Below are positions 6,035 through 19,281 of a DNA stretch of 64,000 nt, piece after piece. Each line of letters opens with the position of its first letter. The first letter of the stretch is position 1. Position numbers and translations under genes: made by a program. The stretch covers positions 1-64,000 of the IMG/VR virus record IMGVR_UViG_3300028654_000384. One strand, written 5' to 3'. The notes under the pieces were generated by a model. That model ran no database searches and was not told the origin of the DNA. It saw nothing but the letters and a program-made list of their open reading frames with translations.

Positions 6035-9000
6035 ATGTCCGCACAAACGTTTCAATCACCCAACTTCTTCGCTCGGGAGATCGATAAGTCTGCACCCGTT
6101 CCACAGGGGCCTGTCGGTGTTCCAGCAGGAGTGATCGGCACTTCTGATAGGGGCCCGGCCTTTGTCCCGGTCACTGTCGGTAATTTCGATCAATTCATCT
6201 CGACGTTTGGTAACCTCGATCCCAATTGCTTTGGGCCCTACGCTGCCTTCTACTTCTTGGCCAACCGCAGCGCGCTGACCTTCATGCGCGTCCTCGGGGC
6301 GGGTGCTAACCAGAGCAGCTCCGACATTACGCGGACGTCGACGACGGGTCGCACCCTGAGCGCCGGCTTTCACCTCGACGGCGTGTCGCCGGCAGTGACG
6401 GGTGACAATCGCCACACGGGCATCGTTCAGTTCATCGTGGGCGTGCACACCCTGCAGCCCAATGAGGCATACGGCGCCGCCATCTTCACCGACAATGATT
6501 CCTTCCACGGTTCGACCGTCCGCCTCGTTCGCGGCATGATCATGACGCCGCAGACGGCTCGCATCATGGTGACCGACGGCAACCACGACTTGTCGGCCGC
6601 TGGGCAGATCAGCAAGTTGGTCGACTTCGGTGACCTGACGAGCACGCCAGGTTACTTCAAGTTGGTCATCAGTTCATCGTTGGGTGCCAGCTTCTACAAC
6701 GACGACGGTAATCCAGGTTGCCGCATCTTGACGGCATCGCTCAATCCTGATGACTCGCGTTACTACGCCAAGTTGTTGAACACCAACCCCGACAGCTTCG
6801 TCCTCTACCAGCACCTGCTCTATGCAGACTTTGCCGTCGACGACGAGATTGCGACGGCCACGGTCGCCGGCATCCTGTCAGGAACTGCCAACACCAGCCT
6901 CAATAACTCCGACACTGCATACGCCGGCGCGCCCTACAACGACAAGTCGACGTACCTGTCATCGTTCGGCGCCTTCGATGCGCGGTTTCAGACGCCGACG
7001 TCGACGTACTTCATCAGTCAACCCTTCGGTAATACCGAGTACGATCTGTTCGCGGTGCAGGCCCTCGATGACGGCGCCTTCGCCAGCGACCTGTACAAGG
7101 TGTCGATCGCCAACGTGCAGGCATCGACCAACCCCGCCTATGCATATGGCACCTTTTCGCTGCAGGTTCGTCAGTTCAATGACACCGACGTCAATCCCAT
7201 CATCCTGGAGCAGTTCAATCACCTGTCGCTCGATCCCACCGCGGACAACTACATTGCCGCCGTCATCGGCGACCGCCGCGTCACCTTCAATTTTGACTCC
7301 ACGTTGCAGGAGGATCGCAGGGTCATCACCAGCGGAAAATACCCGAACAACTCGACCACGATCCGCGTGGTGATGAATGACTCCGTCAACAAGGGACTGA
7401 TCCCGGCGATGGCACTGCCCTTTGGTTTCCGGGGCGCGCTGGTGCCCAAGACCAACGACACGCTGACGGACAACGCCTTCCAGGCGACCAACACCGTCCG
7501 CATCAACGGCATCTTGACGGGCAGCAACTTCGGGCAGCAGGCCCTCAGCGGTGCCATCGTGCCGCCCGTTCCCTACCGCAGCAAGGTGACGAAGGGTGCA
7601 CGGCCCTCGCCGCAGCTGTGGTTGGGCCAACCAGGCCCGGCCGAGCTGTCGAGCCCGCTGTACTACTGGGGTACGCAGTTCGAGCGCCTTGACATACCGC
7701 TCGATCCGAACAATGAATCCATTCCCAACCCGTTGATCGCGTCCTACTCGCAGTTCTTGGGCATCGCCGCCCTCGACAACCTGGTCACCGGGTCAGGTGC
7801 TGACACCCTCAACAACGACAAGTTCAGCCTCAAGAAGGTTGCCTTCTCTAACCTCAGCATCAATGACCTGACGGCGTCGATCGACACTCACATGCGAGAG
7901 GCGGCTTACATCCGCAACGGTCGCAACGACGGCGCGCAGTACACTATCAACGACGGCGTCCTGGGCAGTAGGATCACCCTCGCGACGCTGTTGGCCAAGG
8001 GCACCGCACAGCAGTTCAATCGCTTTTCGCCCTACTTGAAGTTCACCAACTTCCTGCAGGGGGGCTGGGACGGCGTCAACATCCTCGATCCCAATGCCAA
8101 GCGGCTCAATGATCGATCGACCAGCTTCGATGCCGGTGGGCAAGCGGCCGCAGGCTTCATCAGCCCGGGTTTCACCGCACTGAATCAGGCGGGCTCGGGC
8201 CAGAACAACTCGGCGGTGCAGTCGTACCTCACTGCCATCAACGTGATGACGGATCCCATGCAGGCCAACCACAACATTCTGGTGATACCCGGCATTCGTG
8301 AACCCTTCATCACCGATTATGCTGGGACGGCGATCCGCAACTACGGCCTGGCCTACTACATCATGGACCTGCAGAAGTTCGATGAATTCAGCACTCGCTT
8401 GTTCAACGACTCGACGGGATCAGCAGGTGGTCCGGCACGGCCCGACGTGCAGCAGACGGCGACGGGTCTCAACACTCGCGCCCTCGACAACAACTACGTG
8501 GGTACCTACTTCCCCGACGTCATTGTCACCGATAAGTTCAACAACCGTCGGGTCAAGGTGCCGTCGTCAGTCGCCGCACTGGGGGCACTGGCCTTCAATG
8601 ACCGCGTCGGCTACCCGTGGTTCGCTCCGGCGGGCTTCAATCGTGCCGCACTCGACTTCGTCAACAATGTCGAGGTGAGGTTGAATGCGTCGGACAAGGA
8701 CGTGCTGTACAGCAGCAGGATCAATCCGATTGCATCGTTCCCTCGACAGGGGTTCGTCATCTTCGGTCAGAAGACGCTGCAACAGTCAGCATCGGCTCTC
8801 GACCGTGTCAATGTCAGGCGCCTGTTGCTCGAGGTCAAGCGCGTCATCGTCGGCATCGCCATGAAGTTGGAGTTCGAGAACAACACTCCCGACGTGTGGA
8901 ATAAGTTCACGTCGCAGGCGGTGTTGCAGTTGGGCCTGATTCAGGCGGCAGCGGGCATCGAGGCCTTCCAGGTCGTCATGAATGAGACCAATAATTCAGG

Positions 9001-9115
9001 TGATGATCGTGACCAGAACAAGCTGAACGGCAGAATCGTAGTTGTGCCCACGCGCGTGATTGAATTCATCGCGTTGGATTTCATTATCACGAATTCCGGC
9101 GTTCAATTCGTCTAA
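6035..9115 (+). CDS. Tail sheath protein 1
   Basis: SPNFFAREID, GTSDRGPAFVP, PWFAPAGFNR, GQKTLQ...SALDRVNVRRLL, FENN and IEFIALDF sheath motifs. Confidence 0.92.
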   Translation: MSAQTFQSPNFFAREIDKSAPVPQGPVGVPAGVIGTSDRGPAFVPVTVGNFDQFISTFGNLDPNCFGPYAAFYFLANRSALTFMRVLGAGANQSSSDITRTSTTGRTLSAGFHLDGVSPAVTGDNRHTGIVQFIVGVHTLQPNEAYGAAIFTDNDSFHGSTVRLVRGMIMTPQTARIMVTDGNHDLSAAGQISKLVDFGDLTSTPGYFKLVISSSLGASFYNDDGNPGCRILTASLNPDDSRYYAKLLNTNPDSFVLYQHLLYADFAVDDEIATATVAGILSGTANTSLNNSDTAYAGAPYNDKSTYLSSFGAFDARFQTPTSTYFISQPFGNTEYDLFAVQALDDGAFASDLYKVSIANVQASTNPAYAYGTFSLQVRQFNDTDVNPIILEQFNHLSLDPTADNYIAAVIGDRRVTFNFDSTLQEDRRVITSGKYPNNSTTIRVVMNDSVNKGLIPAMALPFGFRGALVPKTNDTLTDNAFQATNTVRINGILTGSNFGQQALSGAIVPPVPYRSKVTKGARPSPQLWLGQPGPAELSSPLYYWGTQFERLDIPLDPNNESIPNPLIASYSQFLGIAALDNLVTGSGADTLNNDKFSLKKVAFSNLSINDLTASIDTHMREAAYIRNGRNDGAQYTINDGVLGSRITLATLLAKGTAQQFNRFSPYLKFTNFLQGGWDGVNILDPNAKRLNDRSTSFDAGGQAAAGFISPGFTALNQAGSGQNNSAVQSYLTAINVMTDPMQANHNILVIPGIREPFITDYAGTAIRNYGLAYYIMDLQKFDEFSTRLFNDSTGSAGGPARPDVQQTATGLNTRALDNNYVGTYFPDVIVTDKFNNRRVKVPSSVAALGALAFNDRVGYPWFAPAGFNRAALDFVNNVEVRLNASDKDVLYSSRINPIASFPRQGFVIFGQKTLQQSASALDRVNVRRLLLEVKRVIVGIAMKLEFENNTPDVWNKFTSQAVLQLGLIQAAAGIEAFQVVMNETNNSGDDRDQNKLNGRIVVVPTRVIEFIALDFIITNSGVQFV

Positions 9116-9962: not shown

Positions 9963-12900
9963 ATGGCGCAACTTAAGTTCGGTTCTGCAGGTGTCTCGAC
10001 GACGGAGATTGACCTCTCACAGCCCACTTCACAGCAGCCTGTCGGAGTACCCGCCGGCATCATCGGCACCGCGCTGAAGGGCCCCGCCTTCGTGCCCATT
10101 ACCGTCGGAGTGATCGACGACTTCTACGCCAAGTTCGGTCTCACTGACGGCAAAAAATTCGGGCCCATCGCCGTCTCCGAATGGCTCCGCAATGCAGGCG
10201 CCGTCACTTACCTTAGGGTCCTCGGAGTTGGCGACGGCACCACGCGCCAGACCAACGGCGACGTCAACTCGGCAGGCTTCACCGTCGGTGAACAGCAACC
10301 CAACGCGACCAACGCAGGCAGCCTGGGTTCCAATCCCTACTCCAACGTCGGCGGTGCCCTGGGTCGCACCTACTTCTTGGGCGCCTTCATGGCCGAGACG
10401 TCGGGTTCCACGTTGTTCAGCCAGGCCGGCATCAATGCTGACGTCGCGGCCTTCACCGCGGCCCCCATCGTCCGCGGCGTGCTGATGGCCACGTCGGGCG
10501 TCATCCTGACGCTGTCGTCGTCGGTGTCAGGCGTCAACAGTGCCCCTGCCTCGAACACTGCGGTGGCCACCGATGCCGTAGGCTCGCCCCTCGGCGACGT
10601 CGTCTTGATGACCAGCGGCATTGCCCGTCAGGACTTCGTGCTGCTGATCAACGGCCTGACCAACACCAATCCGCTGTTCCCGAATGTCATCACCGCATCG
10701 TTCGACATGACGGCACCCAACTACTTTGGCAACGTCCTCAACACTAACCCGCTCAACCTGTCGCAGGCCGGTTACTGCCTCTACGCAGGTTGGGACATTC
10801 ACCCGTCGACGGCCGTCGTCACCGGGTCAGGCATCGTGTCGACCAAGTACGGTGCAGGGGCGGCCACGGTCTTTGCCGCCGGCATCGAGCCTTCGGCCTT
10901 CTTGTTGACGAGTTCGCTGGCACGTGACACGGGTAACTCACAGGTGCCTGATTACGAGGACTTCCGCGATCGTTTTAGTCACGCGCGCAGCTCGTGGGTC
11001 GTCAGCCAGCCCTTCGGCGGCCAGCCTCACAACCTGTTCCGCGTCCATGCCCTCGACGACGGCCACTACGCCTCTACTCTCTACAAGCTGTCGATCGAAA
11101 ATCTGGCTTATTCGTCGGATCCCACCAACCTGTACGGTAGCTTTGACCTCGTCCTACGCCAGTGGGGCGACAATGACCTGGCACCCACCTACATTGAACA
11201 GTGGCGTGGCCTGTCGCTCAATCCGTCTGACTCACGCTACATTGCGCAGGTCATCGGTGACATGAATGCCTACTTTGACTTCGATCGTGGGCCCACCGCA
11301 CAGAAGCTCGTCATCAATGGCAACTATCCGAACGCGTCCAACTACGTCCGCATTGAGATGGATGCCAACGTCGACGCCGGTGAAGTCGATCCGACGGCGC
11401 TGCCCGTCGGCATCCGTGGCGCCCGCCACCTCATCACTGCGGGGTCAGGCACCCTGGCCGCGCCGACCAATCGCATCGTGTCGGGTAGCAACAATGAACT
11501 GTTGATCAGCTCGACCGTTGCCTTTGCGTCGACGGTCGAGCCGCCGGTGCCGATGCGACAGAACTTGACGCAGGGGTCGGGCGCCAAGTTGCAGGTGCAG
11601 CCGCTGTTGTACTGGGGCGTGCAGTTTGAACACGTGCCCGCCGTCGCCACGCCCAATGCGACGTCGCAGCCCAACAATTCATTGAAGTCGTTCGCCAAGT
11701 TCTTCCCCGAGATGAGGACGGACATTCAGAACTTCCGGGTGGGTGATAACCCGGGTGCAGTCACCAGCGCCGGCGCCGTCGTCGACGCCGACAAGTTCAA
11801 TCTCAACATGTTCACCCTGATGAACGTGCAGGTCGTCACCAACTCGGCGGGCACCGCCGATCCCAACCAGTGGGTCAATGCAACCTACGTCCGCAATGGC
11901 AACATTGTTACCAACAACGTCGCGGCAACGCGGGCCTTGCTGACGACGGACTTCATTCAGGCCAACCGCCGCTTCTTGAAGTGGTCGTTCTTCATGCAGG
12001 GTGGTTTCAGCGGCGTCAACATCTTTGACAACGACGAGGCGACACTCTCTAACGCCGCCGTCGAGGCCGACATGAATGCGACCAACCGCGGCTTCAACGT
12101 GGGCCCGACAGTGTCGGCCTACGCCAAGGCTTTGCAGGTGATGGGCGACGTCGCCGGCGTCGACATCGAGCTGTTGGCCGTCCCGGGCATCAGGCACCCC
12201 GTCGTCACCGACAATGCGATCGCGACGGTTGAGCAGCGCTTTGACGCCCTGTTCATCATGGACATTGAACAGTACGATGTCAGCAATCAGGCAGTGACGT
12301 CGGACAGCCAGCAACCGTCGGTGACGCTGACGGCGGCCAACTTCGCCTCCCGTGCCGTCAACAGCAGCTTCGGTGCCGCCTACTTCCCCGACGTGGTGAT
12401 GCCCGATCCCAACACCGGCACCAACCTGTACGTGCCGCCGTCGGTCGCCGTCCTGGGAGCACTGGCCCTCAACGATGCAGTGGGTCACCCGTGGTTCGCT
12501 CCGGCGGGTTTCACTCGCGGAGCGCTGCAGACGACGCTTGAGGCCCGTGTCAAGCTGTCGAAGACCAACATGGACGTTCTGTACGATGTCAACGTCAATC
12601 CGATCGTTGCCTTCCCGGGCAACGCGACGGGGGGTACCAACCCGAAGGGTGGAGTGGTCGTATGGGGTCAGAAGACTTTGCAACAGGCGGCATCGGCCCT
12701 CGACCGCGTCAACGTTCGTCGCCTGCTGATTGAGATCAGGCGGCAGGTCAGGGACATCTCCAACACTGTCATATTTGAGCCCAACCGCGACGCTACGTTG
12801 GCGGCTTTCTCGGCCGCCGTCACTCCGGTCCTTCAAAGGATCCAGGCACAGGCAGGTCTCGAGCGCTTCAAGGTCGTCATCGACAGCAGCACCACGTCTC

Positions 12901-13013
12901 AGCTCGATGTAGAAAATAACACAATTCGTGGAAAAGTGTTTGTCATCCCGACGAAGAGCATCGAGTATGTTAGCATTGACTTCATCGTGACCAACGCGCT
13001 CAACCAACAGTAA
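9963..13013 (+). CDS. Tail sheath protein 2
   Basis: SAGVSTTEID, GTALKGPAFVP, PWFAPAGFTRG, WGQKTLQQAASALDRVNVRRLL, FEPN and IEYVSIDF motifs. Confidence 0.92.
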   Translation: MAQLKFGSAGVSTTEIDLSQPTSQQPVGVPAGIIGTALKGPAFVPITVGVIDDFYAKFGLTDGKKFGPIAVSEWLRNAGAVTYLRVLGVGDGTTRQTNGDVNSAGFTVGEQQPNATNAGSLGSNPYSNVGGALGRTYFLGAFMAETSGSTLFSQAGINADVAAFTAAPIVRGVLMATSGVILTLSSSVSGVNSAPASNTAVATDAVGSPLGDVVLMTSGIARQDFVLLINGLTNTNPLFPNVITASFDMTAPNYFGNVLNTNPLNLSQAGYCLYAGWDIHPSTAVVTGSGIVSTKYGAGAATVFAAGIEPSAFLLTSSLARDTGNSQVPDYEDFRDRFSHARSSWVVSQPFGGQPHNLFRVHALDDGHYASTLYKLSIENLAYSSDPTNLYGSFDLVLRQWGDNDLAPTYIEQWRGLSLNPSDSRYIAQVIGDMNAYFDFDRGPTAQKLVINGNYPNASNYVRIEMDANVDAGEVDPTALPVGIRGARHLITAGSGTLAAPTNRIVSGSNNELLISSTVAFASTVEPPVPMRQNLTQGSGAKLQVQPLLYWGVQFEHVPAVATPNATSQPNNSLKSFAKFFPEMRTDIQNFRVGDNPGAVTSAGAVVDADKFNLNMFTLMNVQVVTNSAGTADPNQWVNATYVRNGNIVTNNVAATRALLTTDFIQANRRFLKWSFFMQGGFSGVNIFDNDEATLSNAAVEADMNATNRGFNVGPTVSAYAKALQVMGDVAGVDIELLAVPGIRHPVVTDNAIATVEQRFDALFIMDIEQYDVSNQAVTSDSQQPSVTLTAANFASRAVNSSFGAAYFPDVVMPDPNTGTNLYVPPSVAVLGALALNDAVGHPWFAPAGFTRGALQTTLEARVKLSKTNMDVLYDVNVNPIVAFPGNATGGTNPKGGVVVWGQKTLQQAASALDRVNVRRLLIEIRRQVRDISNTVIFEPNRDATLAAFSAAVTPVLQRIQAQAGLERFKVVIDSSTTSQLDVENNTIRGKVFVIPTKSIEYVSIDFIVTNALNQQ

Positions 13014-13014
13014 C

Positions 13015-13043
13015 GTGAACAGCCTGCCCGTGCAGGTTAAGAT
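13015..13043 (+). promoter_or_regulatory. Sigma70-like promoter GTGAAC-17-TAAGAT
   Basis: -35 at 13015-13020 and -10 at 13038-13043, before ATG 13057. Confidence 0.65.
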
Positions 13044-13056
13044 GAACTAACACCAC

Positions 13057-13848
13057 ATGTTCATCGTCTACAAGCACATCAATCGAGTCAACGGCAAAGT
13101 GTACATCGGTTACACAGCCAATGGGGTCGATGAACGTTGGCGTGGGCACTGTTATGCCGCTTCTTCAGGTGAGGAGCTCGTGTTTTCGCATGCAATTAGA
13201 AAGTACGGTGTAGATGCCTTTGCACATGATGTGTTAGAGACATGTGCGACAAAGCAACAAGCGTGTGAGGTTGAAATTCGATTGATCGCCGAACACAACA
13301 CCATGGTTCCGCACGGCTATAATATGACACACGGTGGTGAGCGTCGGGTCGGAGAATGGAATCCGATGGCCAAACTCACCGAAGATGATGTCCTTACGAT
13401 CAAGAATACGTGGAACACTCTGCGGCTCGATAATGCGGACGTAATTGGTGACTTCTATCGTCGCTTTGCTCAGAAGTTGAGTGTGACTGCAGACTTGATC
13501 TGTCAAATCATCAAGGGACGATTGTGGTCTCATGTTGGACCTGAACTTGTGAATGTCAACGTGAGTCACCGCGGCAAGGGCAAAGCTGCAGGTGAGAAAA
13601 TGAAGCAACGATGGGCCGACGCGGAGTTCCATGAAGTGCAATCACTCAAGCGCCGCGGCGAAAATAACGGTAGATCAGTGGTGACCGAAGACATTGTCAG
13701 GGCACTGCGCCTTGAGTTCGATCAGCTTGATACGAGCACTAAAGGTGTTACCAAGTCGTTCTGCGTGAAGCATGGTGAACGTCTCGGCGTGACCAGTGAG
13801 AACATCTATGGCATCGTCAAGCGCAAGTCGTGGAAAAACGTCGTCTAA
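13057..13848 (+). mobile_element. Free-standing GIY-YIG homing endonuclease with two HTH-like modules
   Basis: IVYKHIN..NGKVYIGYT, GYNMTHGG, KLTEDDV..I and I.GIVKRKSW; AT-richer than flanks. Confidence 0.88.
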
Positions 13849-13878
13849 TCCTGCGCTACGTCACCTAACGCGTGAGAA

Positions 13879-13910
13879 TGTGCGGGTGCCGACCATACTT
13901 ACTCCTCATG
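13879..13910 (+). promoter_or_regulatory. Late-type promoter block (TACTTA 13896-13901), imperfectly repeated at 18546
   Basis: TGTGCGGGTGCCGACCATACTTACTCCTCATG versus TGTGCGGGTGACGAATACTTACTTTCATCATG. Confidence 0.7.
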
Positions 13911-14195
13911 AAGCTATCGGCACTGCGCCTTGTCGTCCGCGAAGAGTTGTCCCGTCTCAACGAGGTTTCCTTCGCACAGGCGGGTGCCGATCAGCCCCTG
14001 ACGCAGTTCATCAAGCACCTCAACATGGCCAAGGCCGACCTGAATGAGCTGTTTCAACAGACGACTGACACCAAGGCCGGCAATACGGCGACGAAGCTGC
14101 TCAACCAGCTCAACGCCATCATCCTGTCGCTCGACCATGCACCTGAACTGACGAAGAACCCGTTCGCCGACGCGGGACGAAAGGCACGCCGATGA
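13908..14195 (+). CDS. Leader-bearing hypothetical protein (MKLSALRLVVREE)
   Basis: Start reassigned to ATG 13908, just after the late motif. Confidence 0.7.
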   Translation: MKLSALRLVVREELSRLNEVSFAQAGADQPLTQFIKHLNMAKADLNELFQQTTDTKAGNTATKLLNQLNAIILSLDHAPELTKNPFADAGRKARR

Positions 14196-14557
14196 AGCTC
14201 TCACAGAAGCAACTACGACAGATCATCAATGAAGTTGCAGGTCAGAGGATGACCGAGGCCGGCGACGACGGGCGGACGAGTTGGTCACGTGGGTACCGCA
14301 CGGGTGCAAACGAGCCGGACTACGAAGAACTCGGTGGCGCCCTCGCCGGTGCCGTCGTCAACAAGTTGACCAAGAACGTGCAGGATACCATTGACAGGAT
14401 CGTCGAGCACGTGTCGCCCGATGTTGAATTGCCGGCGCGCCTTGAAGACCTCGAAGCTGCAGCCTACGATATCGTCGAAGGGGCGATGCCGATGATCAGG
14501 GACGCGCTTGAGCGGTTGGCCGAGGCGCTGCTACGTAGTCTGATGAACCCCGAGTGA
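14192..14557 (+). CDS. Leader-bearing hypothetical acidic protein (MKLSQKQLRQIINE)
   Basis: ATGA overlap with the upstream gene. Confidence 0.7.
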   Translation: MKLSQKQLRQIINEVAGQRMTEAGDDGRTSWSRGYRTGANEPDYEELGGALAGAVVNKLTKNVQDTIDRIVEHVSPDVELPARLEDLEAAAYDIVEGAMPMIRDALERLAEALLRSLMNPE

Positions 14558-16213
14558 TCAGTAACTGATCTCGTAGGTCAGGTTCTTGCAACCGTAGATC
14601 CTGACGACGCCCGCTTCTTGTGCGACTTGTGCTTCTGTCAATCCCCGCGACTTATCAGCCTTGTACTTGAAGCGATTGAAGCGGTGATTGAAGTCCGTCC
14701 ACCAAAAGCGAGGTGGTGATTCACCTGTCTGGTGCCACCCTGCAGATGACCAACTGTTTGACGCACCCAAGCGGGTGTCGACGTATGACAATAGCCTTTG
14801 GCATCCCAGCTCTTTGGCCCTTGCTTGGGCACTCGATGTCAGCCTGCTCAACGCCCCGGGCACGTTGGTGCCAACCTTAGTGCAGAAGCGGGCAATTTCG
14901 AGGGCACCCTGGTGTTTCTTGTGCAGTGGCGTACGTATTGATAGTGCGGTGATGATTTCACCATTGTGACTCAATCCCAGTGCCCACGATGCCTGTGTGT
15001 CGCCGTCAATGTGATTGCGAGTGAAGAAAGATCTACGTTCAGCAGTATTGAGCTCGACGATGCTGCACTTGCGTGCTCCGACCATTACAGGCGTCAGGCC
15101 CAATCGGTGCGAGATCATAGATTCAACGATCGATCGCTTGTCACGCCACTCATCTTCAAAGACGTGGAGCAGGGTGATGCCCTTCGCTCTACACAGGTCG
15201 GTCTTGTTCTGGTGGTAGATCGCCGACTTGTGGACGATGCTGTGCCAGTAGAGGCCGTTGTACTCGATCGCTAGCGACACAGCAGGCACGAAGATGTCGA
15301 GCTCGAGTCCCTCGATCTGACCGCGATCGTTGGTGGTGATGTCGCTCGTCAATTCCCTGACATAGTTCGCAACGTCCTGTTGCCCTCGGCTACCACCGGG
15401 ATCACAGGCATAGCACCGTCCGTGTTGCAGGCGCCTGAGCGAGCTCGTCCACTGGACCCCGCACTGTGAGCATGCGACTTCAATATTGCTTGTCTTGTCG
15501 TCGACGTATGAATTTAGGCTGTCATTGATCACGCGCAGCGTGGTGCCTTCCTCGATGCGGACCTTGACGTCATCGACCTTCAATCTCTTCATGTCGTCGA
15601 GGTGTTGCCTGAGCTTGGCCTGTGAGTGAGCCAGCGAGACCTTCGCTGCCATGTCCTTGATCCTCTGATCATTCTCCTTGTTCAGGCCTTTGGCCCAGGG
15701 CGTCAGTTCGCCCGAAGCAAAGCGTCCACGTTGATTGTCAGCGAATTCTTGTAGCCTCGAGTCAGTCTCCTTGGTCAGGCCCTTCGACCACGCGACGATG
15801 GTACCCGCATCGAATGCTGCCTGGCGACCCACGCTGGTGGCTTGAGCGCGAGCTGCGACGCGCTCGTCAGTTTCCTTGGTCAGGCCCTTTGACCAACTCT
15901 CTTTACCTACGAGCTTCTCACGTCGTTTTTGTGAGATCTCCTCGGCTTTATCGGCGTCGTACAATGCGTAGATGTTGCCATTGTGGCCGCGCAGTAGGTT
16001 GCCATAGCCTTGTCGCCAACCCAACCATGTGGTGACTTGTTGGCACCCACAGGCACATAGCTTGGGACCTGAATTGAGCTCATTCCATAACGTTTGTGAA
16101 GACGTCTGGTGTGCTGTGGTCAGGTGGGTCTCAAAAGTTGTCTGGCGCTTCGATGAGAATGAACTGCACAGTGGACAAGTGATGGGTTCGACTGTCTGAC
16201 CTAGTTGTGCCAT
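14558..16213 (-). mobile_element. Hef/Vsr-like endonuclease: Zn finger, WxKGLxKE repeats, nuclease domain, C-terminal GNAT/Mom-like domain
   Basis: CPLC..HLTTAH, CACGC, three W.KGL.KE.D.R repeats, ELDIFVP..IEYNGLYWHS, FF..NH..G, E..RFC and LSYVD.R.G motifs. Confidence 0.75.
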
Positions 16214-16218
16214 GGTTG

Positions 16219-16247
16219 ATTATACGTATCCACCTATTCTTGTATAG
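16219..16247 (-). promoter_or_regulatory. Leaderless promoter CTATAC-17-TATAAT on the minus strand
   Basis: Perfect TATAAT 5 nt from the ATG of the 16213 gene; the same -35 occurs at 49980. Confidence 0.6.
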
Positions 16248-16289
16248 TGCACTTGAGTGAGTTTTAGGTCATAATCCTAGATGACGTGA

Positions 16290-16295
16290 TAGTTA
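16290..16295 (+). promoter_or_regulatory. Late-type promoter motif TAGTTA
   Basis: Upstream of GGAG and the tail tube ATG 16337. Confidence 0.6.
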
Positions 16296-16336
16296 GCCTT
16301 GAATGGTGCACCACGCACCCCCAAATGGAGATAAAA

Positions 16337-16825
16337 ATGGCCGAAACGCTCGACGTGACAAGCATGCTTCCCAACAAATTCGAACCCAAGCGCAAGAACC
16401 GTTGGGTGCTCCAGATTGAAGGCGTTGACGCCTACATCATCAAGACGGCCGCGCGGCCCACGGTGACGACGGAGCCCGTCGAGATTCCCTTCATCAACAG
16501 CCGCCGTTACTTGGCCGGGCTGACGAAGTACGGCACCATCGCCGTCACCTTGCACGATCCCATCGCACCGTCGGGCGCGCAGCAGGTGATGGAGTGGGTG
16601 CGACTGCACTTCGAGAGCGTGTCGGGTCGGTCGGGCTACGCCGACTTCTACAAGCGTGACATTCAGCTGAAACTTCTCGATCCCGTTGGGACGGTGGTGG
16701 AGTTATGGGATGTTAAAGGTGCGCTGATCACCGAGGCCAACTTCGGTGAACTCACCTATGAAGACGGCACCCCTGTCGAGATCGCTCTCACTATTCAGGC
16801 GGATCAGTACGTTTTGCAGTTCTAA
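16337..16825 (+). CDS. Tail tube protein (gp19-like)
   Basis: FEPKRKNRW, IPFIN..RY.AG..K...I..TL.DPI.PSGAQ.VMEW.R, YKRDI.L.LLDP.G.VVE.W; start at MAETLDV. Confidence 0.9.
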   Translation: MAETLDVTSMLPNKFEPKRKNRWVLQIEGVDAYIIKTAARPTVTTEPVEIPFINSRRYLAGLTKYGTIAVTLHDPIAPSGAQQVMEWVRLHFESVSGRSGYADFYKRDIQLKLLDPVGTVVELWDVKGALITEANFGELTYEDGTPVEIALTIQADQYVLQF

Positions 16826-16846
16826 GCGACCTTAGTACACATTGGG

Positions 16847-16876
16847 TTGTACAACTTACGTGGGTCGTGGTACAAT
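16847..16876 (+). promoter_or_regulatory. Leaderless promoter TTGTAC-18-TACAAT
   Basis: -10 ends 6 nt before ATG 16883. Confidence 0.55.
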
Positions 16877-16882
16877 TGTGCC

Positions 16883-18538
16883 ATGGCCTACGATCGTTTA
16901 AAGTGTCAGCTGTGTGCCAAGGACTTCGGCCAAGAGGTTGGCTTCCTGCGCCATGTCGCCGACGTTCATGGACTACAACCCGACGAAGAACTTTACGTCA
17001 CGTGGACACTCGTACCTGCAGTCAAGCCCACCTGTGCCTGTGGTTGTGGCCAAGTCGTCAAGTGGAATGGGTGGAAAAAGGGGTACACGTCGAAGTACCT
17101 GCGGGGTCACAACGCTGCATCCGACACCGTCTTTGCCGATCCCGTTCGCGCAAAGGAGTTCGCAGAGAAACGCGCGAAAGGCTACGCCGACGGCAAGTAC
17201 TCGTCGTGGAACAAGGGCCTGACCAAGGAGAATGATCCACGCATTCAGGTGATCGCTGACAAGATCTCCGCATCGCTGATCGAGGGCTACGCTTCAGGGT
17301 CGATCGTTGACTGGCACGCGCTCGATCCTGATAAGGCCCGTGCCGCGGTAGCAAAGCAGTCAGCGACGAAGGCAGCTCGGTTCGCGTCAGGTGAATTGGT
17401 GCCGTGGAACAAGGGTGAAACGAAAGAGACCAATCCGATCATTGCTGCCGCAGCGGTGAAGATTGCCGCGCAGTACACACGCCCCAATGCCGGCGCGCGC
17501 ATCAAGCTCGACCAGGTGAAGGAGCGGATTGACGCACACGCTGACAAGTTCACCGCCGTGTCTGACCTGAGCGAGTACACGACTCGTCGCGTTGCTCGGC
17601 TCAAATTTCGCTGCACTGTCTGCGGCACCGAACAGAGCAAGAGCCTCGCCATGCTCGAGGAGTGTCCCGTCTGCTTCACCTGTCACCCGAAGGAGTCGAA
17701 GGGTCAACTCGAGGTCTACGACTTCGTCAAGGCGCTGTCACCCGACGCTGTGCTGTCAGATCGCACCGTCATCGCTCCACTAGAGCTCGACGTCTTTGTC
17801 CCCTCGCACAAGTTGGGCATCGAGTACAACGGCCTTTACTTCCACAGTGCCGAGTGCCTCACTGACCCGAACTATCACCAGCGCAAGCTCGAGGCCTGTC
17901 TCACCGCCGGCATCAACCTGTTTTCCGTCTACGAGGACGAGTGGCGTGATCGCCGGCCCATCATCGAGGCCATGATCCGTCACCGCCTGTTGTCACCCAC
18001 CGTCACCTACCACGCTCGTAAGTTGTCGGTCGTCGAGCTACCAACCGCTCAGGCTCGTGCCTTCTTTGACGCCAACCACCTCGAGGGCTATGCACGGTCG
18101 TCGGTCACCCTCGGCCTCGTCGATACCAAAGATGGTGTGGTCGCCGCCATGGCACTGCGCAGGCCCTTTCACCGAGGCCATGCCTCATCATACGAGGTGT
18201 CGCGGTGCTGTGCCAAGTTGGGCACCTCTGTCCGCGGTTGGCTGGGCAAGTTGACGACGCGTGCCGCGGGGTGGGCCGCCGAACGGGGTTCGGTGCAGCT
18301 GATGACCTACGTCGATGCTCGTGTCGGCAGGGGCACGGGCTATGAAGCGGCGGGTTGGCAGCTGGTCAAGGCATCGACGGGCATCCGCTTCTGGTGGACT
18401 GACTTCGATCACCGCTACAACCGCTTCAAGTTCAAGGCCGACAAGGCTCGAGGCATGACGCAGGCCCAAGTCGCTGATGAGGCAGGCGTCGTCCAGATCT
18501 TCGGCTGCACCAACTCATCATGGCGTTACGTGATCTGA
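16883..18538 (+). mobile_element. Hef/Vsr-like endonuclease with C-terminal GNAT/Mom-like domain (paralog of 14558-16213)
   Basis: CQLC..HVADVH, CACGC, WNKGLTKENDPR, ELDVFVP..IEYNGLYFHS, FFDANHLEG and LMTYVD.RVG.G.GY...GW motifs. Confidence 0.75.
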
Positions 18539-18545
18539 TCGTCAG

Positions 18546-18577
18546 TGTGCGGGTGACGAATACTTACTTTCATCATG
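18546..18577 (+). promoter_or_regulatory. Late-type promoter block (TACTTA 18561-18566)
   Basis: Imperfect copy of 13879-13910. Confidence 0.7.
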
Positions 18578-19012
18578 CAGCTCACCGAACGTCACCTCCG
18601 CGACCTCATCGGTCAGGTCATCACTGAAGCCAAGGGCAAGGATCGCGGCGCCGACGCTGCCAAGCAGGTGGCTGATGCTATCAAGGTGCTCATCACGGTG
18701 GGCCCCAAGGTCGAGAAGTACTTTGAGGAGAAGTTGTCTATGATGACGACGATCCCCGCTATGTTCTCTGACGAGCTCGAAGTAGAACATGTTGTCGACA
18801 AACTGCGTAATCTCATTGATAAGGCGGTGGAGCTCGACGATGTCGTGGTGCCTGTATACAAGGCCGCCGCAAAGGCTGCGCCCAAGGCTCCCACCCGCGA
18901 CCGCTCTCGCGGCCGCCTGGCCAACGCCAATCCTACCGCCGACGAGCGTTCACTGGGACTAAACAAGCGTCGTGAAATTCGGCGTCAGGCACGTGAGCGT
19001 GGTCGGACCTAG
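18575..19012 (+). CDS. Leader-bearing protein with a basic C-terminal tail
   Basis: MQLTERHLRDLIGQVITE; Arg-rich end (KRREIRRQARERGRT). Confidence 0.7.
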   Translation: MQLTERHLRDLIGQVITEAKGKDRGADAAKQVADAIKVLITVGPKVEKYFEEKLSMMTTIPAMFSDELEVEHVVDKLRNLIDKAVELDDVVVPVYKAAAKAAPKAPTRDRSRGRLANANPTADERSLGLNKRREIRRQARERGRT

Positions 19013-19020
19013 GCCACCAC

Positions 19021-19281
19021 ATGTCCTCCTGGCTCCGCGACGGCACCGCACCCCCACCGAGGGCCCTCGAAATAATCATCGGCCACTTCGATAGGGTTGC
19101 CTGTCCCACATACCTCGGGGCCATCTCGCTTGAAGTGGGGTGGAGCCTGGCCCGGACGCAGGAGATGGTGACGGTGCTGGTGCATCAGGGCTTGGTGCGT
19201 GAGCTGTCGATCGATGAAAAGCGGGCAATGGGTGGTGACGCTGACCACACAATCTACGTGCGCGTGTCAAAAGCGGCCTGA
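19021..19281 (+). CDS. Small protein, possibly winged helix-turn-helix
   Basis: LGAISLEVGWSLARTQEMVTVLVHQGLV resembles a wHTH. Confidence 0.45.
   Translation: MSSWLRDGTAPPPRALEIIIGHFDRVACPTYLGAISLEVGWSLARTQEMVTVLVHQGLVRELSIDEKRAMGGDADHTIYVRVSKAA

What the first reader, a model, noticed from the sequence alone, without database searches (positions are those of the whole stretch)
14558..18538. Divergent pair of nuclease-GNAT/Mom-like fusion genes bracketing the tail tube gene
Seen: two ~550-aa paralogs in opposite orientation, each with a C2H2 finger, CACGC, WxKGxxKE repeats, a Zn ribbon, a Vsr/Hef-like nuclease (ELD.FVP..IEYNGLY.HS) and a further ~170-aa domain (FF..NH..G, E..R.C, L..YVD.R.G, GW). 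Established: Mu Mom is a GNAT-fold DNA-modifying enzyme. Inference from motif recall, not a search: the C-terminal domain is Mom/GNAT-like, so these could be single-chain cut-and-protect selfish elements rather than plain homing endonucleases. Both have their own leaderless promoters inside a late operon.
Basis: partly seen in the sequence, partly recalled or inferred. Interest (0 to 1): 0.65.

Follow-up and report, generated by a model that had tools for sequence, protein, structure and literature searches.

The report
Hef homing endonucleases flanking tail tube
Two selfish, mobile nuclease genes of the known phage "Hef" family sit on either side of the tail tube gene.

Summary
Two paralogs of 551 aa each (39% identical) diverge from the tail tube gene of an uncultured rhizosphere jumbo myovirus. 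Each has three parts:
- an N-terminal zinc-finger and repeat DNA-binding module;
- a Vsr-like "EDxHD" nuclease, whose best structural match is I-Bth0305I;
- a GNAT domain, whose best Foldseek match is phage Mu Mom (8BV8).

The nuclease+GNAT core is homologous to Hef of phage U5 (34% identity, E 3e-33), reported as a working homing endonuclease. So these are Hef-family free-standing homing endonuclease genes.

In 79 related viral contigs, the two sites beside the tube gene are empty, hold a Hef gene in the same orientation, hold decayed remnants, or hold a different nuclease (TnsA-like or HNH-like) fused to the same N-terminal module. That is the pattern expected of homing genes.

The Mom/GNAT guess is supported. 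In this subfamily the equivalents of Mom H58, E108, R111, D149 and R151 are nearly invariant. The Pfam Mom model does not match, S124 is G in copy B, and D149/R151 are lost in many other Hef proteins, including U5 Hef.

The "cut-and-protect" idea was published as a prediction by Iyer et al. 2021 and is still untested. Verdict: a new member of a known kind, with an open and testable question about the GNAT domain.

The parts
14558..16213 (-). Hef-family homing endonuclease gene, copy A (551 aa, P0001)
   Evidence: ORF. phrog_3339 'homing endonuclease' 5e-75. Core is 34% identical to U5 Hef, E 3e-33. 644 homologs found.
15389..16213 (-). Copy A, aa 1-275: N-terminal DNA-binding module (C2H2 finger, CxCGC knuckle, 3 W-x-KG-x-TKE-x-D repeats, helical linker, CxxC...CxxC ribbon)
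   Evidence: Invariant Cys/His/Trp/Gly columns in alignment A4. Only weak C2H2 and ribbon Pfam hits. In relatives the same module is fused to TnsA-like and HNH-like nucleases at the same genomic site.
15092..15388 (-). Copy A, aa 276-374: Vsr-like / EDxHD nuclease domain
   Evidence: AF2 model pLDDT 89. Foldseek 3r3p E 1.5e-4, TM 0.74, 26% identity. VIA: 3r3p Z 12.4, 3hrl Z 12.2, Vsr 1cw0 Z 11.2. Profile against PDB finds only 3r3p, E 0.0011. D306, E317, N319, H324, H334, K337 and D354 are invariant or nearly so.
14561..15091 (-). Copy A, aa 375-551: Mom-like GNAT domain with an insertion between strands beta6 and beta7
   Evidence: AF2 model pLDDT 96. Foldseek top PDB hit 8bv8 Mom, E 1.6e-6. 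VIA: GNATs Z 12-13.6; Mom Z 12.7 over 163 residues. Profile hits GCN5, 2.5e-5. hhalign against the Mom family, E 2.6e-4.
16219..16246 (-). Promoter-like site of copy A: TATACA, 16 nt, TATAAT, ending 5 nt before the ATG; no Shine-Dalgarno sequence
   Evidence: Function not tested.
16337..16825 (+). Tail tube gene (gp19-like), the conserved gene flanked by the two insertions
   Evidence: phrog_4542 1e-27; PF06841 9e-5, below cut-off. 70-99% identical homologs in 80 IMG/VR loci. GGAGA ribosome-binding site before the ATG at 16337.
16848..16876 (+). Promoter-like site of copy B: TGTACA, 17 nt, TG-extended TACAAT, ending 6 nt before the ATG at 16883
   Evidence: The same region is conserved upstream of orthologs that share only ~50% protein identity (L009, L036, L038, L040, L042).
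16883..18538 (+). Hef-family homing endonuclease gene, copy B (551 aa from the ATG at 16883; the ORF opens at a TTG at 16847; P0002 numbering starts at that TTG)
   Evidence: ORF. 39% identical to copy A. phrog_3339 3.5e-58 and phrog_1384 'Mom-like' 7e-4. Start choice.
17699..17998 (+). Copy B nuclease domain (P0002 aa 285-384)
   Evidence: Aligned with copy A. The nuclease positions tallied (Q278, E304, D306, E317, N319, H324, H334, K337, E353, D354) are the same in both copies.
17999..18535 (+). Copy B Mom-like GNAT domain (P0002 aa 385-563)
   Evidence: NCBIfam XF1762_fam 2e-8, below cut-off. phrog_1384 7e-4. The equivalents of Mom H58, E108, R111, D149 and R151 are present, Y159 is Y, and S124 is G.
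13057..13848 (+). GIY-YIG homing endonuclease gene in the same sheath-tube insertion island (context)
   Evidence: PF01541 3.9e-8; phrog_314 7.7e-27.

Best explanation
These are two free-standing homing endonuclease genes of the Hef family. They have invaded the two intergenic sites flanking the highly conserved tail tube gene of an uncultured jumbo myovirus. One site lies between the sheath and tube genes, the other between the tube gene and a baseplate gene.

**What is shown**
- Each protein is modular. A variable N-terminal zinc-finger and repeat module is followed by the invariant Hef core.
- The core is a Vsr-like EDxHD nuclease packed against a Mom-like GNAT domain.

**What is inferred**
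- The N-terminal module recognises a site in or near the neighbouring conserved genes.
- During co-infection with a relative that lacks the gene, the nuclease cuts that relative's DNA near the empty site. Recombinational repair then copies the Hef gene, with its own promoter, into the site.
- Each gene seems to bring a sigma-70-like promoter placed so that transcription would start at or next to the ATG, giving a leaderless mRNA.
- The GNAT domain is under strong purifying selection and keeps a cofactor-type loop and most Mom catalytic residues. It is probably a working ligand-binding or transferase module that is integral to Hef function.
- Whether it modifies DNA to give self-immunity, helps hold or flip bases in the target, or does something else is not settled.
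For: **Family membership**
- phrog_3339 5e-75.
- The core matches U5 Hef over residues 2-268 of 272, at 34% identity, E 3e-33. It also matches annotated Hef-like genes in 421 phage records.
- Taylor et al. 2011 (PMC3239194) already placed Hef-type enzymes in the EDxHD family.

**Folds**
- Nuclease: 3r3p TM 0.74, Z 12.4.
- GNAT: Mom 8bv8 is the top Foldseek hit and gives the longest VIA alignment.

**Nuclease catalytic residues**
- Equivalents of I-Bth0305I D196, N208 and H213, plus E317, are conserved in 119-121 of 121 homologs and are present in both copies.

**Mobility pattern in 79 related loci**
- Upstream site: empty in 47, holds a full minus-strand Hef gene in 15, and has other content in 13.
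- Downstream site (62 of 79 loci measurable): empty in 15, holds a full plus-strand Hef gene in 7 (9 of all 79 loci when contigs that end before the baseplate gene are counted), and has other content in 40.
- Position and orientation are always the same. Four loci hold both genes.
- Broken or internally deleted copies occur in L006 and L025.
- The Hef orthologs are only 43-56% identical, while the tube protein is 76-86% identical.

**Module swapping**
- At the same downstream site, L010 and L018 carry the same N-terminal module fused to a TnsA-like nuclease (PF08722, 1e-14). L016 carries it fused to an HNH-like domain.

**Same habit elsewhere**
- Hef-like genes sit beside sheath, tube or capsid genes in Cassandra, Campylobacter phages, RaK2, Vibrio D504 and Klebsiella phages, and in LIMEstone1 (PMC3296691).

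**Promoters**
-.

**GNAT conservation in 121 homologs**
- H401 121/121, E439 121/121, R442 120/121, D479 120/121, R481 119/121.
Against: - No cleavage, homing or transcription was observed here.
- The target sites are unknown. Relatives are too diverged (76-84% nucleotide identity) to read target-site polymorphisms.
- No near-identical variant lacking a Hef gene was found in the four public runs laid on the locus.
- No RNA data exist.
- The equivalents of I-Bth0305I E170 and D222 are Q278 and H334 here. U5 Hef shows the same two residues.
- Some EDxHD enzymes, including I-Bth0305I itself, work without any GNAT domain. The role assigned to that domain is therefore inference only.
Confidence: 0.8

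Rival explanations
1. Single-chain cut-and-protect. The GNAT domain covalently modifies adenines in the phage's own copy of the nuclease target, by Mom-like aminoacyl or acyl transfer. The element can then cut unmodified relatives, or host DNA, without cutting itself. 2021. It is compatible with homing, because it would explain self-immunity.
For: - Mom is the best Foldseek PDB match and gives the longest structural alignment, which includes the beta6-beta7 insertion that is essential in Mom (PMC13219725).
- Equivalents of Mom H58, E108, R111, D149 and R151 are nearly invariant in this subfamily.
- The GNAT domain is as conserved as the nuclease: both show 59% mean column identity.
- Pfam's Mom model hits 11-31% of members in three ESM Atlas clusters with the same two-domain fold.
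- EDxHD nucleases can work without a GNAT domain, so the domain must add something.
- The prediction is published (PMC7824862).
Against: - PF25680 Mom does not match either protein at E <= 10.
- hhalign against the Mom family gives only 42% probability.
- The equivalent of essential S124 is G in copy B and is G or A in 31 of 121 homologs.
- Across diverse Hef proteins, the D149 equivalent is D in only 8 of 14 and the R151 equivalent is R in only 8 of 14. U5 Hef, the tested homing enzyme, has N at the D149 position.
- The W48 dimer contact of Mom is absent.
- The cofactor loop looks like a canonical CoA-type loop (G-G-A-S) rather than Mom's loop. A tRNA-dependent reaction is therefore not implied.
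- No modification data exist.
Confidence: 0.25
2. The GNAT domain is a non-catalytic structural part of the Hef core. It would be a DNA clamp or base-flipping reader, or a platform that positions the nuclease, inherited from a Mom-like ancestor that bound DNA.
For: - The Mom catalytic D and R equivalents are lost in about 40% of diverse Hef proteins, while the fold, the H58 and R111 equivalents and the aromatic Y159 equivalent persist.
- The two domains pack rigidly in the model: pTM 0.90, pLDDT 96.
- The Mom fold is proposed to bind duplex DNA and flip adenine (PMC13219725).
Against: - The cofactor-binding loop (V-x-G-G-A-S-R/K-L) is kept across very distant Hef proteins. That is unusual for a pseudo-enzyme.
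- Polar residues at the Mom active-site positions are invariant in the 121-member subfamily.
- The N-terminal module already supplies DNA binding.
Confidence: 0.3
3. These are not homing elements but a phage-encoded restriction-modification-like weapon. The nuclease attacks host or superinfecting phage DNA in general, and the GNAT domain protects the phage genome genome-wide. This is Iyer et al. 2021 read literally.
For: - The published prediction.
- Several copies per genome in some jumbo phages, for example 5 places in the PA5oct relatives and 11-12 in Campylobacter phages.
Against: - Presence or absence at fixed intergenic sites next to conserved genes, decayed copies, interchange with GIY-YIG, HNH-like and TnsA-like nuclease genes, and long variable sequence-reading N-terminal modules are all hallmarks of homing genes.
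- U5 Hef is reported as a homing endonuclease.
Confidence: 0.1
4. The GNAT domain acetylates a protein, for example the enzyme itself or a host repair or recombination factor, to favour repair by gene conversion.
For: The domain profile matches protein acetyltransferases (GCN5, 2.5e-5), and the top VIA scores are N-terminal acetyltransferases. The motif A loop is retained.
Against: - These are generic fold matches.
- The features shared specifically with Mom (H58 and R111 equivalents, beta6-beta7 insertion) point to a nucleic-acid substrate.
- There is no supporting context.
Confidence: 0.08

Closest known systems
Hef of T4-like phage U5 (Sandegren, Nord & Sjoberg 2005; GenBank AY262133) and annotated 'Hef-like' homing endonucleases of Acj9, Campylobacter CP220, Dickeya LIMEstone1 and others
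   Same: - Same nuclease+GNAT core (34% identity over 267 residues, E 3e-33) and similar total length (544 against 551 aa).
- Free-standing gene wedged between conserved essential genes.
   Different: - The N-terminal module differs. U5 and Acj9 have a helix-turn-helix-like segment where these proteins have a zinc ribbon, and they lack the C2H2/CxCGC head.
- The target gene differs: nrdA/nrdB in U5 and Acj9, tail genes here.
- U5 Hef has N at the Mom D149 position, where these proteins have D.
I-Bth0305I, prototype of the EDxHD (Vsr-like) homing endonuclease family (PDB 3R3P; PMC3239194)
   Same: - The nuclease fold is the best structural match (TM 0.74, Z 12.4, 22-26% identity).
- Equivalents of D196, N208 and H213 and the extra acidic residue are present.
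- The DNA-binding repeats lie N-terminal to the nuclease.
   Different: - I-Bth0305I is intron-encoded, 266 aa long and has no GNAT domain.
- The E170 and D222 positions are Q and H here.
Mom of phage Mu (PDB 8BV8; Pfam PF25680; PMC13219725)
   Same: - GNAT fold with an insertion between the last two strands.
- Equivalents of H58, E108, R111, D149, R151 and an aromatic residue at Y159.
   Different: - Not matched by the Pfam Mom model.
- Only 11-14% identity.
- W48 and Y59 are not conserved, and S124 is variable.
- The loop before helix 3 is canonical G-G-A-S rather than Mom's N-S-E-S.
- The domain is fused to a nuclease, whereas Mom is a stand-alone dimer. The chemistry is unknown.
Mom-REase fusions of jumbo phages described by Iyer, Anantharaman, Krishnan, Burroughs & Aravind 2021 (PMC7824862), e.g. 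the five in PA5oct
   Same: The same protein family. A PA5oct 'putative homing endonuclease' has the same two-domain fold (TMq 0.89, E 2e-28), and PA5oct relatives carry 5 copies.
   Different: That paper reads them as restriction-modification-like systems. The locus evidence here favours homing genes. Neither reading has been tested at the bench.
T4 Seg (GIY-YIG) and Mob (HNH) free-standing homing endonucleases
   Same: - Intergenic insertion next to conserved genes.
- Modular DNA-binding repeats.
- Variable presence among relatives, and clustering with other nuclease genes.
   Different: A different catalytic fold and no GNAT domain.

Membership tests
Hef / EDxHD (Vsr-like) homing endonucleases | Vsr-like nuclease fold | tested here: met
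   Foldseek 3r3p E 1.5e-4, TM 0.74. VIA: 3r3p Z 12.4 (rmsd 2.9, 94 aligned), 3hrl Z 12.2, Vsr 1cw0 Z 11.2.
Hef / EDxHD (Vsr-like) homing endonucleases | Catalytic residues equivalent to I-Bth0305I D196, N208 and H213 | tested here: met
   D306 121/121, N319 119/121, H324 121/121. Present in both copies.
Hef / EDxHD (Vsr-like) homing endonucleases | Acidic residues equivalent to I-Bth0305I E170 and D222 | tested here: not met
   Q278 (119/121) and H334 (121/121) occupy the aligned positions. U5 Hef also has Q and H there, so this looks like a feature of the Hef branch.
Hef / EDxHD (Vsr-like) homing endonucleases | Sequence homology to the characterised U5 Hef over the whole core | tested here: met
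   tblastn of residues 2-268 of 272: 33.7% identity, E 3e-33. phrog_3339 5e-75.
Hef / EDxHD (Vsr-like) homing endonucleases | Variable presence at a fixed site among related genomes | tested here: met
   Upstream site: empty in 47, full Hef gene in 15. Downstream site: empty in 15, full Hef gene in 7 (9 of all 79 loci when contigs that end before the baseplate gene are counted). Orientation is always the same, and decayed copies occur.
Hef / EDxHD (Vsr-like) homing endonucleases | Site-specific cleavage and preferential inheritance in mixed infection | not testable with these tools
   Needs bench work. The host is unknown.
Mom family (Pfam PF25680) | GNAT fold | tested here: met
   Profile hits GCN5, 2.5e-5. 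More than 240 GNAT structures at E <= 1e-3, with Z 12-13.6.
Mom family (Pfam PF25680) | Match to the family model above its cut-off | tested here: not met
   No PF25680 hit at E <= 10 for either C-terminal domain, whereas Mu Mom scores 2.4e-75. phrog_1384 'Mom-like' gives only 7e-4, on copy B.
Mom family (Pfam PF25680) | Profile-profile relationship to Mom homologs | tested here: inconclusive
   hhalign A1 against A5: E 2.6e-4, probability 42%, 126 columns. Pfam Mom hits 11-31% of members of three same-fold Atlas clusters.
Mom family (Pfam PF25680) | Essential residues R111, D149 and R151 (and H58) | tested here: met
   R442 120/121, D479 120/121, R481 119/121, H401 121/121. Both copies have them. 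In the wider Hef family, the D and R equivalents are kept in only 8 of 14.
Mom family (Pfam PF25680) | Essential S124 | tested here: inconclusive
   The aligned position is S in copy A and G in copy B. In the subfamily it is S in 82, G in 22 and A in 9 of 121. The placement depends on a weak alignment.
Mom family (Pfam PF25680) | HTH-like insertion between the last two strands | tested here: inconclusive
   An insertion of ~30 residues with a helix lies at the same place. Mom aligns over 163 residues, against ~135 for other GNATs. No residue-level superposition was available.
Mom family (Pfam PF25680) | W48-dependent dimer | tested here: not met
   The aligned position is Ala.
Mom family (Pfam PF25680) | Glycyl-tRNA-dependent modification of N6 of adenine in DNA | not testable with these tools
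   Biochemistry is required.
Canonical acyl-CoA GNAT | Motif A loop Q/R-x-x-G-x-G/A | tested here: inconclusive
   G453 is invariant. Most Hef proteins read V-x-G-G-A-S, but copy A reads V-P-G-A-L-S and copy B reads V-R-G-W-L-G. CoA binding was not tested.
NUMOD3 DNA-binding repeats (Pfam PF07460) | Match to the family model | tested here: not met
   No hit at E <= 10 on the N-terminal halves. The likeness of the W-x-KG-x-TKE repeats to NUMOD3 is from memory. NUMOD3 occurs in 35% of one same-fold Atlas cluster.

The most novel reading that the evidence does not exclude
Hef-type homing endonucleases may be self-immunising. Their Mom-like GNAT domain would put an acyl or aminoacyl-derived mark on an adenine inside the enzyme's own recognition site in the carrier genome. 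The gene could then target a perfectly conserved sequence without needing resistance mutations. That would make it a one-polypeptide 'homing restriction-modification' element, possibly using acyl-CoA rather than Mom's charged tRNA.
Probability: 0.2. Interest if true: 0.75.

Novelty: new member of a known kind. Interest (0 to 1): 0.4.

Why it matters
- For genome annotation, these genes should be named Hef-family (EDxHD) homing endonucleases with a Mom-like GNAT domain. They should not be left as hypothetical proteins or labelled HNH.
- The wider point is an open question that is easy to test. A large, purely viral family couples a site-specific nuclease to a conserved relative of the only known DNA-acylating enzyme, and nobody has shown what that domain does.
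- If it modifies DNA, it would be a new way for selfish nucleases to avoid cutting their own genome. It would also be a source of site-directed DNA-modifying enzymes.
- This locus offers two diverged copies, natural empty sites in relatives to use as substrates, and natural variants in which the same targeting module carries other nucleases.

Tried and rejected
- **Pfam and NCBIfam on the whole proteins.** Only sub-threshold hits: zinc fingers, MTES_1575 at 0.011, and XF1762_fam at 2e-9 below its cut-off.
- **Word search with the C-terminal domain alone.** It found 13 proteins, mostly gene fragments on short contigs and no clear stand-alone relatives. The tool's length and word limits apply, so this says little.
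- **PDB sequence search with the domain profile.** It did not list Mom.
- **hhalign against Mu Mom alone.** Weak, 7% probability.
- **Mapping target-site polymorphisms.** I compared occupied and empty loci, but the relatives are only 76-84% identical at the nucleotide level, so this was not informative.
- **Public runs.** There were 21 rhizosphere DNA runs and no RNA. Contigs of four runs laid on 13000-18950 showed no joint that skips a Hef gene and no differences, so there is no evidence either way on recent gain or loss or on transcription starts.
- **Homodimer prediction of the nuclease+GNAT core.** No verdict. It is not evidence for or against dimerisation.
- **Feature search of the N-terminal module in the ESM Atlas.** Only leads below 0.9.
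- **Paralogy of the small flanking ORFs.** Not supported: E 1.5, and no alignment for the other pair.
- **Split sheath matches in relatives.** These are an in-frame extra domain, not an intron.
- **Papers not held.** Sandegren 2005 and Iyer 2009 are not in the library. What I say about U5 Hef's activity rests on the GenBank annotation, on citing reviews and on my own recollection.
- **The large representative-protein search.** Not used, because the family was not left open.

Full report
**1. What is in the sequence**

The window holds two long ORFs at the stated coordinates: 14558..16213 on the minus strand (551 aa, P0001, "copy A") and 16847..18538 on the plus strand (P0002, "copy B"). They are 39% identical over their full length (E 1e-130) and point away from each other.

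Between them lies a gp19-like tail tube gene (phrog_4542 1e-27; PF06841 9e-5, below cut-off). Nearly every other gene in the 64-kb window is on the plus strand, so copy A is an oddly oriented insert in a block of structural genes.

Upstream lie two tandem sheath paralogs (34% identical), a GIY-YIG endonuclease gene (PF01541 3.9e-8) and two small ORFs. Downstream of copy B are two small ORFs and a T4-baseplate-family gene (PF12322 1.6e-14).

They are conserved across 121 homologs collected from metagenomes.

I make two corrections:
- Copy B most likely begins at the ATG at 16883, which also makes it 551 aa. That start and the sequence before it are conserved in orthologs.
- The tube gene begins at the ATG at 16337, behind a GGAGA site.

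**2. Domain identities**

An AlphaFold2 model of residues 280-551 of copy A, built on 42 homologs, is very confident (pLDDT 96.3, pTM 0.90).

*GNAT domain*
- Its C-terminal ~170 residues form a GNAT fold. The best Foldseek match in the PDB is the crystal structure of phage Mu Mom (8bv8, E 1.6e-6), closely followed by ordinary acetyltransferases.
- In the VIA re-alignment the GNATs are tied at Z 12-13.6. Mom (Z 12.7) aligns over 163 residues, against about 135 for the others.
- By sequence, the domain profile finds GCN5 (2.5e-5) but not Mom.
- The Pfam Mom model PF25680 does not match at E <= 10.
- phrog_1384 "Mom-like" matches copy B at 7e-4.
- A profile-profile comparison with 33 Mom homologs gives E 2.6e-4 at 42% probability.

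*Nuclease domain*
- The nuclease domain, modelled alone (pLDDT 89), matches the I-Bth0305I catalytic domain best (3r3p; Foldseek E 1.5e-4, TM 0.74, 26% identity; VIA Z 12.4).
- Next come a DUF559 protein (Z 12.2) and Vsr (Z 11.2).
- The domain profile finds only 3r3p in the PDB sequence set (E 0.0011).

*N-terminal half*
- It has no family match.
- It consists of a C2H2 finger, a CxCGC knuckle, three W-x-KG-x-TKE-x-D repeats and a four-cysteine ribbon.

**3. Family**

The nuclease+GNAT core matches Hef of phage U5 over 267 of 272 residues (34% identity, E 3e-33). It also matches genes annotated as Hef-like homing endonucleases in 421 phage records.

Taylor et al. 2011 had already placed Hef-type enzymes in the Vsr-like "EDxHD" family (PMC3239194).

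Structure searches of viral libraries find the same two-domain fold in many phage proteins (TM 0.82-0.97). One is a PA5oct "putative homing endonuclease". In three of the ESM Atlas clusters, Pfam's Mom model hits 11-31% of members. The N-termini of these proteins vary (NUMOD3, DUF723, DUF4379, DUF7487, HTH).

Iyer et al. 2021 described these same jumbo-phage proteins as Mom domains fused to restriction-fold nucleases, and predicted that one domain cuts and the other protects (PMC7824862).

**4. Evidence that these are mobile homing genes**

I fetched 80 IMG/VR loci that encode a tube protein 70-99% identical to this one and mapped the neighbouring genes. One locus is the same phage and was left out, which leaves 79.

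| Site | Measurable loci | Empty | Full Hef gene | Other content |
|---|---|---|---|---|
| Sheath-tube (upstream) | 75 | 47 (gap of 41-210 nt) | 15, always on the minus strand | 13 |
| Tube-baseplate (downstream) | 62 | 15 | 7, always on the plus strand | 40 |

- At the downstream site, 9 of all 79 loci hold a full plus-strand Hef gene when contigs that end before the baseplate gene are counted.
- Four loci hold both genes.
- L006 and L025 hold broken or internally deleted copies.
- The Hef orthologs are only 43-56% identical, while the tube proteins are 76-86% identical.
- At the downstream site, L010 and L018 carry a gene with the same N-terminal module joined to a TnsA-like nuclease (PF08722, 1e-14). 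L016 carries it joined to an HNH-like domain. The N-terminal module is therefore a portable targeting module, and several nuclease types compete for the same site.
- Hef-like genes in unrelated phages also sit beside sheath, tube or capsid genes.

All of this is the known behaviour of free-standing homing endonuclease genes.

**5. Promoters**

Each gene is preceded by a sigma-70-like site whose -10 hexamer ends 5 or 6 nt before the ATG. Neither has a Shine-Dalgarno sequence.

In 64 kb, the pattern of a -10 hexamer, 4-7 nt and ATG occurs three times. Two of those are at these two start codons.

For copy B the arrangement is conserved in orthologs that share only about 50% protein identity. For copy A the upstream regions of orthologs differ.

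No RNA data exist to test it.

**6. Is the GNAT domain a working Mom-like enzyme?**

Mutagenesis of Mu Mom showed that R111, S124, D149 and R151 are needed for activity, that H58A and Y59A cut it sharply, and that an insertion before the last strand is essential (PMC13219725).

In the alignment with the Mom family, the equivalents in the 121-member subfamily are as follows.

| Mom residue | Equivalent here | Conservation in 121 homologs |
|---|---|---|
| H58 | H401 | 121/121 |
| E108 | E439 | 121/121 |
| R111 | R442 | 120/121 |
| D149 | D479 | 120/121 |
| R151 | R481 | 119/121 |
| Y159 | position 488 | aromatic in 120/121 |
| S124 | position 456 | S 82, G 22, A 9 (S in copy A, G in copy B) |

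- The Y59 and W48 equivalents are not conserved.
- Across 14 very diverse Hef proteins, the H58 and R111 equivalents are invariant.
- In the same set, the D149 equivalent is D in 8, the R151 equivalent is R in 8, and U5 Hef has N at the D149 position.
- The loop before helix 3 reads V-x-G-G-A-S-R/K-L in most Hef proteins. That is closer to the canonical CoA-binding loop than to Mom's own loop. It explains why the profile finds GCN5 rather than Mom, and it leaves the donor substrate open.
- The GNAT domain is as conserved as the nuclease (59% mean column identity for both).
- EDxHD enzymes such as I-Bth0305I work without a GNAT domain.

I conclude that the domain is probably a functional ligand-binding or catalytic module, and that DNA modification is possible but unproven. 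If it does occur, it cannot depend on the Mom D/R pair in every member of the family.

**7. Verdict**

The domain assignments are right. But the proteins are members of the known Hef homing endonuclease family rather than an alternative to it, and the cut-and-protect idea is a published, untested prediction.
- New here are a well-documented pair of insertion sites in an uncultured rhizosphere jumbo-phage lineage, the sharing of one targeting module among three nuclease types, and a residue-level comparison with the recently solved Mom structure.
- Interest is moderate, because the role of the GNAT domain is an open question that simple experiments could settle.

**8. What led nowhere**

- Laying contigs of four public runs on the locus showed no variant lacking a Hef gene.
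- A homodimer prediction gave no verdict.
- The word search with the C-terminal domain gave mostly fragments on short contigs.
- Two key papers were not held.

Noticed in passing
window 13057-13848 (+): A GIY-YIG homing endonuclease gene lies directly after the sheath gene, in the same insertion island as copy A. Related GIY-YIG genes occur at this place in L003, L036, L038 and L041.
   Followed up: partly
window 6035-9115 and 9963-13013 (+): Two tandem tail sheath paralogs of about 1020 aa each (34% identical, E 2e-164). Related contigs have two or three.
   Followed up: partly
L064:3537-7973 (also L053, L063, L065-L067, L070, L072): The sheath gene of some relatives has an in-frame insertion of roughly 100-650 aa near residues 125-200. 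In L064 it is one continuous 1478-aa ORF, so this is an extra domain rather than an intron.
   Followed up: partly
L010:2513-3442, L018:1306-2223, L016:8535-9365: At the tube-baseplate site, relatives carry genes in which the same C2H2/CxCGC/repeat N-terminal module is fused to a TnsA-like (PF08722) or an HNH-like nuclease in place of the Hef core.
   Followed up: yes
window 14192-14557 and 18575-19012 (+): The two small ORFs next to the Hef genes begin with similar N-termini (MKLSQKQLRQIINE and MQLTERHLRDLIGQVITE), each ending in an I/L-x-E motif. They are otherwise unrelated (E 1.5) and match no family. The likeness to capsid-targeting leader peptides is only an impression.
   Followed up: partly
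window 19021-19281 (+): An 86-aa ORF with a weak IclR-type helix-turn-helix match (E 0.013) lies between the copy B island and the baseplate gene.
   Followed up: no
window 14400-18700: The locus is held, at up to 100% of sampled words, by 21 rhizosphere metagenome runs from 2019. The closest cultured phage has a sheath protein only 32% identical (Microcystis phage Mel-JY01). The lineage is therefore uncultured, with contigs up to 361 kb.
   Followed up: partly
L006:9400-10725, L025:5965-6502: Copy-B-type genes in these relatives are broken or internally deleted, as expected in the decay phase of a homing gene's life cycle.
   Followed up: partly
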